Assembly (NCBI RefSeq): GCF_001194135.2
Contig: NC_069006.1
Span: forward strand, 7,697,708-7,733,942
Reading direction: 5' to 3'
Length of the DNA: 36,235 nucleotides
From: Octopus bimaculoides
Lineage: Eukaryota
The notes below the pieces were generated by a model, which saw only the letters and a program-made list of their open reading frames with translations, was not told the DNA's origin and ran no database searches. Below, one piece after another: positions 357 through 2,488 of this stretch (its first letter is position 1; each line of letters begins with the position of its first letter). The position numbers were made by a program, and so were the translations under genes.

Positions 357-800
357 CATAGTTATATATATATATGTATGTATCTGACGTATGAATATAT
401 AAATGTTTTTCTACCTTGAAACGGGGTCTGTTCTCGTGCGACTCCACCCCCTCCATCACCCACAATTCATTCAGAGTCTACTCTTTCACCTTACCTTCTA
501 CTACACCTTCGCAAAACAACCGAAATACCAGGATTGAACTTCATGCATGCTTACACAAAATGTAATGCGAAATTGTACAAAAAATCTACCGTAGTTGGCC
601 AACACAAGAAGAAGAAAAAGAAAAAGAAGAGGAAAAAAAGACAAAAAAAACATAACAAGCCCCCAAACCAAACCCCAAGCAAACCTTGACCAGAAACGCA
701 AACCAAACACACACAAACTCCGACGGACCGTAATTTTTGTTAAGCTGGGGGGTAGACACCAACAGAAGCAACAACAATAACATTATTCACTACAAAAACA
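30..800. promoter_or_regulatory. CpG-enriched 5' region and probable promoter/5'UTR of SIN1, possibly bidirectional
   Basis: CpG-containing, repeat-poor sequence just upstream of the ATG, contrasting with the rest of the window. Minus-strand GT donor-like sites at 494 (AAG|GTAAGG) and 192 (CAG|GTGAGG). Confidence 0.35.
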
Positions 801-2488
801 TGGCCATGATGGACGACTATGTTTTTTTAATCTCGCATATCCGGAACTCTTTTATTACAAGCGATAATACCGGAATGTATGAGATGATTATTGAAGGCGA
901 AGAACACGAGAAAGCACAAGAAAAACGCCCCTTGTGGTGGAATGCCGAGGGTGATGGCGGTGGTGGTGGTGGTGGTGATAGCGGTGGGGGTCGCGGGACC
1001 CCGTCGTCGTCGTCGTCGACGACAACGACGTCGACGACGACGACGACGAAGACGCCAACAGCAGCAACAACAACAACAACAGCGCGATACATCCATTCGA
1101 ACCACGATGGTGGTGTTGACGGTTGTCTGTTTGATCTAGACGACGGGGATTTGTGTCGTTCGTATGACATAATGCCAGATATGGATTACGGAGCTCATCG
1201 ACGCAGATCGAACACTGCCCAACGATTGGAAAGGATGAAGAAAGAGAAACGGAAGCAGGTGAAAGTGACGCACATATCGTGGAGGACGACAGCGGGCCAT
1301 TGCAATCCTGATGGTGATCATGATGATATGTTTGAAAAGAAACCGATTCCTTTGCCGACGAAAACCAGTGTCCATAAAGCTGCATCTTCTCTGCTTGCTC
1401 AGCAATTGCAAACCTCTACAGGAATTATGTCTAACCCTTTTCTAGATTATGCTAAATACGATGGTAAAGCTCAGATTGTGGTACCCACCAAGAAAATAGA
1501 CATTTTTCTTACTATGGCCTTGCCTAAAGACCGCGGTTTTCCCATGCATGTGGTAGTTGTTGTTAATGCCAAAGTACATGAATTAATCGGCTTGATATGT
1601 TGGCAATATACCAACGAGGGACGAGAACCTTCTCTCAAGGACAATGCCTCCATGTACAGCCTGCATATTGCAGAAGACGATGGAGAGGTCGACATGGACT
1701 TTCCAAGTTTGGACAACCGGGAACCCGTATCGAAATTCGGCTTCAGTAAGCTTGCCTTAGTGGAACTCGAAGAACCATCACCTCCAATGAAGAATTCCGT
1801 TATCATTACAGTGAACGTACCTAATCGGGGTTTCCACAAGTTCCAAGAGGAGGATTTGACGAAACCTCTGCGAGACATCCTCACCAAAGTGTTGAAAAAG
1901 AGGAAAATCAAATTATTACCAGGAATGAACTATATTCTTGAGAAACAGAAGGAACCAGGTGTTGCTGTCGATTTAGACACACTTCTTTCAAATCTGGACA
2001 ATTTTGATTTCTGTCTTGTCCGCGAACATAGCACTCGGGGCGAGATCGAAGAAATCGACTTCCAGGACTCAAACGACATGGCGACCACCTTCATGAGTCC
2101 TCAATACAAAAGCTACATTGTGAACCTGGTGCAGCGACTTCGCATCAACACCGAAGTACACTTAGGGGTAAGCGGTGAAAAGGTTGAGATTGACCCAGTA
2201 GCCAGTAAGGGTACGGCGTTGTTTTTTCGTCAGAAGGCTGTGACATATGAGGCAGACATGATCGCTGCCTGCGACCTACTTGAAGAGAAATCAAATGGTA
2301 AAAGTATATTCCGTTTGATCTGCTTTGCTGGTCATGACTACAGACATTACGATTTTGAGGCAGACCATGCTGTAGCAAAAGAGATCATTCAGAAAGTGAA
2401 TAACATTTTAAATCTTCTACTTAGCCAAGTTAGAAAAACATATTTGGCCTCTCGAGGGAAGAAACTTAAAAAAATGCATTCCAAATAA
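800..2488 (+). CDS. MAPKAP1: Target of rapamycin complex 2 subunit SIN1/MAPKAP1, 562 aa, single uninterrupted CDS
   Basis: ATG at 800 in good context (aaaaacATGG). N-terminus MAMMDDYVFLISHIRNSFITSDNTGMYEM matches the SIN1 N-terminal motif. Also RRRSNTAQRLE (Akt site); CRIM domain ~1385-1765 (NPFLDYAKYDGK...LIGLICWQYTNEGREP...LHIAEDDGEVDMDFPSLD...KFGFSKLALVE); RBD ~1795-2030; PH domain ~2102-2420 (YKSY...RLRINTEVHLGVSGEKVEIDPV...ACDLLEEK...HDYRHYDFE). The ORF track start at 737 is a non-ATG extension. Recognised from memory of the family. Confidence 0.96.
   Translation: MAMMDDYVFLISHIRNSFITSDNTGMYEMIIEGEEHEKAQEKRPLWWNAEGDGGGGGGGDSGGGRGTPSSSSSTTTTSTTTTTKTPTAATTTTTARYIHSNHDGGVDGCLFDLDDGDLCRSYDIMPDMDYGAHRRRSNTAQRLERMKKEKRKQVKVTHISWRTTAGHCNPDGDHDDMFEKKPIPLPTKTSVHKAASSLLAQQLQTSTGIMSNPFLDYAKYDGKAQIVVPTKKIDIFLTMALPKDRGFPMHVVVVVNAKVHELIGLICWQYTNEGREPSLKDNASMYSLHIAEDDGEVDMDFPSLDNREPVSKFGFSKLALVELEEPSPPMKNSVIITVNVPNRGFHKFQEEDLTKPLRDILTKVLKKRKIKLLPGMNYILEKQKEPGVAVDLDTLLSNLDNFDFCLVREHSTRGEIEEIDFQDSNDMATTFMSPQYKSYIVNLVQRLRINTEVHLGVSGEKVEIDPVASKGTALFFRQKAVTYEADMIAACDLLEEKSNGKSIFRLICFAGHDYRHYDFEADHAVAKEIIQKVNNILNLLLSQVRKTYLASRGKKLKKMHSK
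950..1086 (+). repeat. Coding trinucleotide repeats (GGT, TCG, ACG, ACA) giving a Gly/Ser/Thr low-complexity tract inside SIN1
   Basis: Translates to GDGGGGGGGDSGGGRGTPSSSSSTTTTSTTTTTKTPTAATTTTTAR, in frame. Confidence 0.9.

What the first reader, a model, noticed from the sequence alone, without database searches (positions are those of the whole stretch)
800..2488. Intronless SIN1/MAPKAP1: probable retrogene of a core mTORC2 subunit
Seen: the whole SIN1 architecture (N-terminal domain, CRIM, RBD, PH) lies in one 1689-bp open frame with no stop, frameshift or TE insertion, although the rest of the window is heavily TE-invaded. Known: vertebrate MAPKAP1 is a multi-exon gene. Inference: this locus arose by retroposition, possibly using the RTE machinery abundant here, and is under purifying selection. 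If no intron-containing parent survives, a central TOR-pathway gene was replaced by its retrocopy.
Basis: partly seen in the sequence, partly recalled or inferred. Interest (0 to 1): 0.7.

Follow-up and report, generated by a model that had tools for sequence, protein, structure and literature searches.

The report
Single-exon SIN1 gene in coleoid cephalopods
This octopus window carries the animal's only detectable SIN1/MAPKAP1 gene (a core mTORC2 subunit) as one uninterrupted exon; the roughly ten introns found in other molluscs were lost before octopuses and cuttlefish diverged, most likely when a reverse-transcribed mRNA copy replaced the original gene.

Summary
Window 800-2488(+) is an intact 562-codon ORF with all four SIN1 Pfam domains above their curated cut-offs, and it matches human MAPKAP1 in solved mTORC2 structures (E about 1e-118).

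- **Outgroups have introns.** Pecten, Haliotis and the brachiopod Lingula each have about 11 coding exons. Nine of Lingula's ten introns share position and phase with a mollusc, and all ten sites are seamless in the window.
- **The single-exon state is old.** It is orthologous in Octopus vulgaris, with collinear flanks. An unidentified cephalopod on the Sepia (decapodiform) side has it on a 61-kb genomic contig. Sepia esculenta RNA-seq contigs show the gene is expressed.
- **The gene is under constraint.** dN/dS is 0.056 (octopus pair) and 0.028 (decapodiform pair). Octopus-decapodiform synonymous sites are saturated.
- **No parent copy was seen.** No second cephalopod SIN1 appears among 120 listed homologues, and no relic exons lie from 10 kb upstream (seen in O. 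vulgaris) to 33 kb downstream.

The link to local RTE elements is not: the event predates the coleoid radiation. Whether the copy moved to a new locus (retrogene replacement) or converted the gene in place could not be tested, because every synteny probe failed. This is a new member of a known kind and of moderate interest.

The parts
800..2488 (+). Complete single-exon CDS of SIN1/MAPKAP1 (562 aa; ATG 800, TAA 2486-2488)
   Evidence: 96% identical to O. vulgaris CAI9741462.1 and clustered with O. sinensis XP_029651579.1; matches human MAPKAP1 chain 6zwm_G at E=3.6e-118
800..925 (+). Conserved N-terminal segment (MAMMDDYVFLISHIRNSFITSDNTGMYEM...)
   Evidence: Aligns to human MAPKAP1 residues 1-58 (domain 1) and to Haliotis residues 1-42
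947..1090 (+). Octopus-specific Gly/Ser/Thr low-complexity insert encoded by trinucleotide microsatellites; it differs in length between octopus species in multiples of 3 and is much shorter in decapodiforms
   Evidence: alignment
1094..1345 (+). Pfam SIN1 N-domain (aa 99-182), including the RRRSNTAQRLER motif
1388..1774 (+). CRIM domain (aa 197-325)
   Evidence: 120.9 bits
1823..2023 (+). Ras-binding domain RBD_SIN1 (aa 342-408)
   Evidence: 57.6 bits; PDB 7lc1_B match
2102..2413 (+). SIN1 PH domain (aa 435-538)
   Evidence: 81.4 bits; PDB 3voq_A match
1191..2298 (+). Nine seamlessly fused ancestral intron sites. The first base after each former junction is at nt 1191, 1308, 1469, 1639, 1813, 1923, 2031, 2166 and 2298. 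A tenth site lies at about 1021-1051, inside the low-complexity tract.
   Evidence: GT-AG junctions and phases mapped in Lingula, Haliotis and Pecten and projected onto the window ORF
100..799 (+). 5' flank mostly 86-98% identical to O. vulgaris (0.74-0.78 in three 50-nt bins: 351-400, 451-500, 651-700), above the neutral expectation from dS 0.25; putative promoter/5' UTR (inferred)
   Evidence: vs dS
2489..2850 (+). 3' flank 86-100% identical to O. vulgaris; putative 3' UTR. It contains A13 (2562-2574) and A10 (2660-2669), two of only three sense-strand A>=10 runs in the 36-kb window; possible poly(A) relic (suggestive only).

Best explanation
Window 800-2488 is the functional, apparently single-copy SIN1/MAPKAP1 orthologue of an Octopus species (probably O. 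bimaculoides). SIN1 is the scaffold subunit that recruits AGC-kinase substrates to mTORC2 through its CRIM domain and couples the complex to Ras and phosphoinositides through its RBD and PH domains.

The ancestral lophotrochozoan gene had about ten introns in its coding sequence. In the stem lineage of coleoid cephalopods, before Octopodiformes and Decapodiformes split, all of them disappeared at once. A spliced SIN1 mRNA was reverse-transcribed in the germ line and the cDNA became the only gene copy.

I commit to retrogene replacement ('orphan retrogene') as the most likely route. In this route the cDNA inserted elsewhere, acquired a promoter, took over the function, and the multi-exon parent then decayed.

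Shown: the single exon, ancestral intron positions, antiquity, purifying selection, and expression in Sepia.
Inferred: the RNA intermediate, relocation to a new locus, loss of the parent, and the biochemical role.
For: - Full four-domain SIN1 in one ORF, aligning to human MAPKAP1 from mTORC2 cryo-EM entries over residues 67-508.
- Outgroups are multi-exon: Pecten 6.6 kb, Haliotis 8.1 kb, Lingula 5.5 kb, about 11 coding exons each. Lingula's ten GT-AG introns were all resolved, and nine share alignment position and phase with Haliotis and/or Pecten. All sites are seamless in the window. Losing every intron precisely is the signature of a cDNA intermediate.
- O. vulgaris has the same single-exon gene (1710 bp for 569 aa), with flanks collinear to window 1-12150.
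- Genomic contig L011 (61 kb, TE ORFs on both sides) carries the full CDS as one ORF. It groups with Sepia esculenta transcripts (94.5% aa) and is sister to Octopus.
- The carrying runs are Sepia esculenta RNA-seq, so the gene is transcribed.
- dN/dS is 0.056 (window vs O. vulgaris, dS 0.246) and 0.028 (Sepia vs L011, dS 0.86). Octopus-decapodiform synonymous sites are saturated.
- Only one cephalopod clade appears among the 120 best homologues, although the search does recover both Mya paralogues.
- No relic SIN1 exons lie outside the ORF in the window (33 kb downstream), L001 or L011 (10 kb each side).
- Sense-strand A>=10 runs are rare (0.08-0.37 per kb). Even so, two or three sit within 30-230 nt 3' of the stop in each genome. 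In decapodiforms the run follows an AATAAA-like signal.
Against: - Relocation, a defining step of retrogene replacement, is untested. No neighbouring genes lie within the reachable flanks, and the outgroups themselves share no neighbours within 10 kb.
- The A-runs are weak evidence. Cephalopod UTRs are generally A-rich. Sepia contig L002 reads through the run, and a conserved decapodiform 3'-UTR motif lies beyond it.
- No target-site duplications were sought successfully; none are expected after an event this old.
- Absence of a parent rests on annotated proteomes and short flanks, not on a whole-genome search.
- Direct expression evidence exists for Sepia only. For Octopus there are annotation models and conserved flanks.
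- L011's species is unknown; its decapodiform assignment is phylogenetic.
Confidence: 0.55

Rival explanations
1. In-situ intron erasure. The original SIN1 gene never moved. A reverse-transcribed copy of its own spliced mRNA recombined with the chromosomal gene (cDNA-mediated gene conversion). This removed all coding introns while keeping the ancestral promoter and neighbourhood.
For: This explains equally well the precise loss of all ten introns, the single copy, the continuous purifying selection and the absence of any parental relic. It needs no new promoter for an essential, broadly expressed gene. Both flanks are conserved between octopus species, as expected for an established regulatory region.
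Against: Complete conversion of a 5-8 kb, 11-exon gene in one event is considered rarer in animals than retroposition plus parental loss (general knowledge; see the framing in PMC5803294). The tight head-to-head PBX-SIN1 arrangement seen in Lingula (1.2 kb apart) is absent within 10 kb upstream in O. vulgaris and L011. It is also absent in Pecten and Haliotis, so this is uninformative. The A-run after an AATAAA-like signal just 3' of the CDS fits an inserted polyadenylated cDNA slightly better.
Confidence: 0.3
2. Retro-duplicate, not replacement. An intron-containing parental SIN1 still exists somewhere in coleoid genomes but is unannotated or highly diverged, and the window gene is an additional retrogene copy.
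For: No whole-genome tblastn could be run. Cephalopod annotations are incomplete; for example, no NCBI-named decapodiform SIN1 appeared at all.
Against: Three annotated Octopus proteomes contribute only this one cluster. Hits as distant as vertebrates (>=395 bits) are listed, yet no second cephalopod sequence appears, while both Mya copies are recovered. dN/dS of 0.03-0.06 with full domain retention across a split deep enough to saturate synonymous sites is what is expected of the sole functional copy. The many Sepia-group and other decapodiform-side Logan contigs (from RNA-seq runs where identified) all encode this form.
Confidence: 0.08
3. Gradual, independent loss of individual introns over time (ordinary intron turnover), or independent total losses in octopods and decapodiforms.
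For: Individual intron losses are common in animal evolution. Only two deep cephalopod lineages were sampled at the genomic level.
Against: All ten sites are lost in both lineages with none remaining. Meanwhile a brachiopod and two molluscan classes kept nine to ten shared positions over a longer time. Ten independent precise losses, or two parallel total losses, are far less parsimonious than one event in the common ancestor.
Confidence: 0.05
4. Artefact: cDNA contamination or mis-assembly produced an apparently intronless gene.
For: The window contains N gaps (a scaffolded assembly).
Against: The same structure is present in three independently sequenced genomic records (the window, the O. 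vulgaris chromosome, the ENA contig), and O. sinensis contributes a same-length 569-aa protein model in the same cluster. The gene is embedded in collinear, repeat-bearing genomic flanks.
Confidence: 0.01

Closest known systems
Retrogene replacement / 'orphan' retrogenes (e.g. amphioxus and Ciona SYCP1, tetrapod Sowah, about 25 human orphan retrogenes; PMC5803294, PMC3548309)
   Same: A single coding exon where the ancestral gene was multi-exonic. It is the only detectable copy in the genome, fixed across a whole clade, transcribed and under purifying selection.
   Different: Relocation away from the ancestral locus, which defines those cases, could not be shown here. The gene is a core growth-signalling scaffold rather than a meiotic or tissue-restricted gene. 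The event is very old, since synonymous sites between the two carrier lineages are saturated.
Multi-exon metazoan SIN1/MAPKAP1 (human MAPKAP1 in mTORC2 structures 6ZWM, 5ZCS, 7TZO; molluscan orthologues)
   Same: Same four-domain order (N-domain, CRIM, RBD, PH), about 40% identity to vertebrate and 50-60% to molluscan orthologues, and a conserved RRRSNTAQRLER motif.
   Different: No coding introns, so exon-skipping isoforms like those of vertebrate SIN1 (my own knowledge) cannot be produced from the CDS. It also has an octopus-specific Gly/Ser/Thr microsatellite-encoded insert between the N-terminal segment and the N-domain.
cDNA-mediated in-situ intron loss (the reverse-transcriptase/homologous-recombination model best known from yeast)
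   Same: Precise, simultaneous removal of adjacent introns with the reading frame preserved.
   Different: That model usually gives 3'-biased, partial loss. Here every coding intron, including the 5'-most, is gone.
Processed pseudogenes / young LINE-mediated retrocopies
   Same: Intronless copy of a spliced mRNA; A-rich tract just 3' of the CDS.
   Different: The ORF is intact, dN/dS is 0.03-0.06, the gene is shared by lineages with saturated dS, and there are no recognisable target-site duplications. It is neither a pseudogene nor young.

Membership tests
SIN1/MAPKAP1 (mTORC2 subunit) | N-domain + CRIM + Ras-binding domain + PH domain in this order | tested here: met
   Pfam PF05422, PF16978, PF25322 and PF16979 all score above gathering cut-offs, in the canonical order
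SIN1/MAPKAP1 (mTORC2 subunit) | Orthology: nests within animal SIN1, with molluscs, as a single lineage | tested here: met
   NJ tree of 55 homologues; the cephalopod clade sits inside Lophotrochozoa. Best hits are all named MAPKAP1.
SIN1/MAPKAP1 (mTORC2 subunit) | Sequence match to SIN1 chains of experimentally solved mTORC2 | tested here: met
   6zwm_G E=3.6e-118, query 119-559 vs chain 67-508, plus the N-terminal 1-61
SIN1/MAPKAP1 (mTORC2 subunit) | Physical assembly with TOR/Rictor/LST8 and substrate recruitment | not testable with these tools
   Requires co-immunoprecipitation or a kinase assay in cephalopod cells or a heterologous system
Retrogene replacement (orphan retrogene), criteria as in PMC5803294 | Single coding exon where the ancestral gene was multi-exonic | tested here: met
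   One ORF in the window, O. vulgaris and L011. About 11 exons with shared intron positions in Pecten, Haliotis and Lingula.
Retrogene replacement (orphan retrogene), criteria as in PMC5803294 | Lies at a locus different from the ancestral multi-exon gene | tested here: inconclusive
   No outgroup neighbour exons near cephalopod SIN1, but the outgroups share no neighbours either. The PBX probe returned no molluscs. The Ca-channel fragment was unusable.
Retrogene replacement (orphan retrogene), criteria as in PMC5803294 | Parental copy lost from the genome | tested here: inconclusive
   No second cephalopod SIN1 among the 120 best hits, and no relic exons in the available flanks. A whole-genome search was not possible.
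Retrogene replacement (orphan retrogene), criteria as in PMC5803294 | Copy is functional: transcribed and under purifying selection | tested here: met
   dN/dS 0.056 and 0.028. Full-length contigs from Sepia esculenta RNA-seq runs. Direct octopus RNA evidence was not available.
Retrogene replacement (orphan retrogene), criteria as in PMC5803294 | Retroposition scars: poly(A) tract after a polyadenylation signal, target-site duplications | tested here: inconclusive
   Locally enriched A>=10 runs 30-75 nt after the stop in all lineages, preceded by an AATAAA-like signal in decapodiforms. However, transcripts and a conserved motif extend beyond the run. No TSDs were identified.
   The single-exon state is shared with the decapodiform side at saturated dS. 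No window repeat is shared with L011. No RT domain or hit was found in the window.
Processed pseudogene | Disabled ORF or neutral evolution (dN/dS near 1) | tested here: not met
   Intact 562-codon ORF; dN/dS 0.056

The most novel reading that the evidence does not exclude
SIN1 is one visible case of a wave of retrogene replacements of essential, ancestrally multi-exon single-copy genes on the coleoid stem. This wave would coincide with the retroelement expansion and genome reorganisation that created the coleoid genome. Losing SIN1's splice-isoform capacity would then have been compensated by other diversifying mechanisms, such as alternative starts like the 438-aa O. vulgaris model, or mRNA recoding.
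Probability: 0.12. Interest if true: 0.65.

Novelty: new member of a known kind. Interest (0 to 1): 0.4.

Why it matters
SIN1 defines mTORC2 substrate specificity and is single-copy and intron-rich in the other animals examined here. A clade-wide, ancient, intron-free version shows that even a core growth-signalling scaffold can be rebuilt from its own mRNA and persist across a split deep enough to saturate synonymous sites.

It gives cephalopod genomics a clean, datable marker: present in both coleoid superorders, with Nautilus still to be checked. It is also a natural experiment on how an essential gene's regulation survives, or is re-acquired, after loss of all introns. In practice, the single-exon structure makes the cephalopod gene easy to clone and edit.

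The full-text search found no paper that mentions MAPKAP1, octopus and intron together.

Tried and rejected
1. **Microsynteny by tblastx.** I compared the 10-kb flanks of SIN1 in Lingula, Pecten and Haliotis with the window, L001 and L011. There were no hits, and the outgroups share no neighbours with each other, so the result is uninformative.
2. **PBX macro-synteny.** An 84-aa probe from the two Lingula PBX exons inside L010 returned only short vertebrate and arthropod fragments. No mollusc was listed, so no chromosome comparison was possible.
3. **Ca-channel neighbour as a second marker.** The part inside the Lingula locus is only the low-complexity C-terminal tail and is unusable.
4. **Haliotis rufescens P0003 'TBPIP + SIN1' model as a neighbour fusion.** Rejected. 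It is SIN1 with one exon repeated about ten times.
5. **Identifying the other two decapodiform-side sub-lineages and L011 through run accessions.** These accessions are not in the searchable literature. Only Sepia esculenta was identified.
6. **A codon-usage shift to explain pS above 0.75 between octopus and decapodiforms.** GC3 is similar (0.45-0.54), so this is plain saturation or a limitation of the method.
7. **Mya arenaria 'SIN1-like' as an independent retrocopy.** Rejected. It spans 19.7 kb and is a multi-exon duplicate.
8. **An RT/RTE remnant in the window.** An RT probe from L011 gave no hit, and Pfam on the eight longest complex frames found only a mariner transposase fragment.
9. **Nautilus.** No candidate sequence appeared among the hits, so the event cannot be dated relative to the nautiloid split.
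Full report
**Observation**

The window contains a stop-free frame from 737 to 2488 on the + strand. The first ATG is at 800 and the TAA stop is at 2486-2488, giving 562 aa. Pfam finds all four SIN1 modules above their curated cut-offs and in canonical order:
- SIN1 N-domain, aa 99-182
- CRIM, aa 197-325
- RBD_SIN1, aa 342-408
- SIN1_PH, aa 435-538

The protein matches human MAPKAP1 chains from solved mTORC2 complexes (6zwm_G, E=3.6e-118, residues 119-559 vs 67-508, plus the N-terminal 60 residues). It keeps the RRRSNTAQRLER motif.

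No dispersed repeat touches the ORF. In the window as a whole, 28% is self-repetitive, 3% is microsatellite and 3% is assembly gaps.

**Source organism**

The exact protein sits in a 90% cluster with O. vulgaris CAI9741462.1 (96% identity) and O. sinensis XP_029651579.1. With dS of 0.25 to O. vulgaris, the window is a different Octopus species, probably O. bimaculoides (my inference).

**Is the single exon real and orthologous?**

In O. vulgaris the called gene spans exactly 1710 bp for 569 aa, and tblastn gives one uninterrupted HSP. The window is collinear with that locus from position 1 to about 12150, interrupted only by lineage-specific insertions. cDNA contamination or mis-assembly is excluded.

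**Are introns ancestral?**

SIN1 spans 6.6 kb in Pecten maximus, 8.1 kb in Haliotis asinina and 5.5 kb in the brachiopod Lingula anatina, each with about 11 coding exons.
- I resolved all ten GT-AG introns in Lingula. Nine share alignment column and phase with Haliotis and/or Pecten, for example DMDxG|AHRRR phase 1, LVREHS|xRG phase 1, TEVxLG|xSGxK phase 1 and EEKSxG|K phase 1.
- The tenth lies in a poorly alignable region but has the same phase in all three.
- In the window these sites fall at nt 1191, 1308, 1469, 1639, 1813, 1923, 2031, 2166 and 2298, with the tenth at about 1021-1051. All are read through seamlessly.

The ancestral gene was intron-rich, and the cephalopod gene lost every coding intron precisely. 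That pattern is expected from a spliced-mRNA/cDNA intermediate.

**How old is the event?**

The next-closest cluster (76% aa identity) consists of about 1.6-2.5-kb Logan contigs plus one protein on a 61-kb ENA genomic contig.
- Runs SRR25097168/70/71 and SRR19578109 are Sepia esculenta transcriptome runs (data-availability statements of PMC10571815 and PMC10141105). These contigs are therefore cuttlefish mRNAs, and the gene is expressed.
- The genomic contig L011 carries the full CDS as one ORF. The metagenome gene caller read through the TGA stop. TE-derived ORFs lie on both sides.
- L011 is 94.5% identical in protein and 86% in DNA to Sepia (dS 0.86), but only 75% in DNA to the window, with no alignable flank or shared repeat.
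- In a tree of 55 homologues the cephalopods form one clade, (window + O. vulgaris) sister to (L011 + Sepia group). Every other unnamed hit falls among bivalves, gastropods or annelids.
- Octopus-decapodiform synonymous sites are saturated. GC3 is similar in both, so this is depth of divergence and not a compositional shift.

The single-exon state therefore predates the Octopodiformes/Decapodiformes split. This removes the proposed link to the retroelements now in the window. None of them is shared with L011, and at least one SINE-like insertion (about 2925-3030) is absent at the orthologous O. vulgaris site. I also found no RT domain or RT hit in the window, only a mariner transposase fragment.

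**Selection and function**

dN/dS is 0.056 for window vs O. vulgaris (dN 0.014, dS 0.246) and 0.028 for Sepia vs L011. The 5' flank (about 100-650) is mostly 86-98% identical between the two octopus species, with three 50-nt bins at 0.74-0.78. The 3' flank (about 2500-2850) is 86-100% identical. Both are clearly above the level implied by dS, which fits conserved UTR or regulatory sequence. The gene is the functional SIN1.

**Is there a surviving parent?**

Among the 120 best homologues (all at least 395 bits, reaching out to vertebrates) there is no second cephalopod sequence, although both Mya arenaria copies are recovered. A Haliotis SIN1 tblastn finds nothing outside the ORF in the window (33 kb downstream), L001 or L011 (10 kb on each side). 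This supports, but does not prove, that the intron-containing parent is gone. A whole-genome search was not possible.

**Retroposition or in-situ conversion?**

The literature defines retrogene replacement by a single-exon copy at a locus different from the ancestral one, with the parent lost (PMC5803294; PMC3548309). I could not test relocation.
- Lingula shows PBX | SIN1 | Ca-channel within 25 kb. From my own knowledge this mirrors human PBX3-MAPKAP1-CACNA1B on 9q33-34.
- No PBX or channel exon lies within reach in the cephalopod loci, and Pecten and Haliotis lack that tight arrangement too.
- A PBX probe returned no molluscs, and the channel fragment was unusable.

Scars of retroposition are only suggestive. 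Sense-strand A>=10 runs are rare (0.08-0.37 per kb). Even so, two or three lie within 30-230 nt 3' of the stop in the window, O. vulgaris and L011. In the decapodiforms the run follows an AATAAA-like signal. However, Sepia contig L002 reads through it, and a conserved palindromic motif (ATATTGGTCAATATTT) lies beyond it.

My estimates are:
- retrogene replacement: about 0.55
- in-situ cDNA conversion: about 0.30
- a hidden surviving parent: about 0.08
- stepwise or parallel intron loss: about 0.05
- artefact: about 0.01

**Comparison and novelty**

This works like, and is probably a member of, the known class of orphan or replacement retrogenes (amphioxus and Ciona SYCP1, tetrapod Sowah, human orphan retrogenes). 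Two of the defining criteria, relocation and loss of the parent, remain inconclusive. It is unambiguously a member of the SIN1/MAPKAP1 family. No paper in the searchable library mentions MAPKAP1, octopus and intron together. A general search for retrogenes in cephalopods returned nothing on this gene.

**Verdict**

This is a new member of a known kind and of moderate interest. It is a clean, ancient, clade-wide case affecting a core TOR-pathway scaffold, but not a new kind of system.

Noticed in passing
window 947-1090: Octopus-specific Gly/Ser/Thr-rich insert in SIN1, encoded by (GGT)n, (TCG)n, (ACG)n and (ACA)n microsatellites. It differs by in-frame indels between the window and O. vulgaris and is far shorter in the decapodiform lineage. 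This is a coding microsatellite tolerated in a linker of an otherwise highly constrained protein.
   Followed up: partly
window ~2925-3030 (also 8520-8693, 22556-22692, 23159-23335, 23571-23755, 26000-26189): SINE-like element (…CATCGGAGCCTGGTGTTGCCATCCGGTTTCACCAGTCCTCAGTCAAATCGTCCAACCCATGCTAGCATGGAAAGCGGACGTTAAACGATGATGATGA…). The copy just 3' of SIN1 is absent at the orthologous O. vulgaris site, so it inserted after the two octopus species diverged.
   Followed up: partly
window 11694-12150, 20336-20706, 25040-25437, 27204-27609, 27813-28173, 32506-32903, 35199-35592: A dispersed repeat family of about 400 bp, with at least seven copies in both orientations in the window and many in the O. 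vulgaris locus (70-89% identity). It has no long ORF and is probably a non-autonomous element.
   Followed up: no
window 19424-19741 (+): A 106-aa stop-free frame matches the Pfam Transposase_1 (mariner-type DDE) C-terminal part, E=3.5e-11. It is a decayed DNA-transposon fragment.
   Followed up: partly
window 24054-24380 (-): A 109-aa frame (…RRLRWYGHVVRMDEDS…GRGRPRKTWAEVVRQDL…). From memory it resembles the C-terminal tail of non-LTR (RTE/L2-like) ORF2 proteins. It has no Pfam support and abuts an N gap.
   Followed up: partly
window ~4195-4490, ~23750-24020, ~28230-28670, ~31730-32010: Runs of N (assembly gaps) flanked by TA/CA microsatellites. The window comes from a scaffolded assembly, so repeat content is underestimated.
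   Followed up: no
L002 1738-1753; L012 1793-1808; L011 11694-11709: A near-palindromic 16-mer, ATATTGGTCAATATTT, is conserved 85-115 nt downstream of the SIN1 stop in all three decapodiform-side sub-lineages despite dS of about 0.9. It is absent from octopus and the outgroups. It may be a 3'-UTR regulatory element.
   Followed up: partly
L010 (Lingula) 1-8804, 10001-15495, 19960-25495: Lingula has PBX (head-to-head, about 1.2 kb from the SIN1 ATG), SIN1, and a voltage-gated Ca-channel alpha-1 gene (tail-to-tail) within 25 kb. This resembles human PBX3-MAPKAP1 and CACNA1B on 9q33-34 and may be ancient bilaterian microsynteny.
   Followed up: partly
P0003 (Haliotis rufescens isoform X2, 786 aa): This SIN1 model contains about ten tandem copies of one ~27-aa exon (GLSYYLEKQNEPGSVIDLDDLVLLFVV). 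Its precomputed 'TBPIP' Pfam hit is spurious. It is probably a tandem-duplication or assembly artefact.
   Followed up: partly
L018 (Mya arenaria CP111028.1) 5001-24697: Mya arenaria has a second, closely related SIN1 copy flagged 'LOW QUALITY'. It spans 19.7 kb and lies on the same chromosome as the main copy. It is a multi-exon DNA-level duplicate, not a retrocopy.
   Followed up: partly
L011 11606-11626: The ENA metagenome gene call reads through the true TGA stop (…KKMHSK-W-TKNNI), as if an alternative genetic code had been applied to a eukaryotic host contig. The 541-aa product is 6 residues too long.
   Followed up: yes
P0122 (O. vulgaris CAI9741463.1, 438 aa): A second annotated O. vulgaris product starts at the internal Met of …DIMPDMDYGAHRRR…, equivalent to window aa 126 (nt ~1175). 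It lacks the N-terminal segment and the low-complexity insert. This may reflect an alternative transcription or translation start that gives an isoform without splicing.
   Followed up: no
L002 ~1800-1900 and L011 ~11760-11850: Both decapodiform-side 3' regions carry a tRNA-like B-box-containing segment (…AGTTCAAATYCC…) at similar distances from the stop. It may be a shared SINE insertion in the 3' UTR.
   Followed up: no
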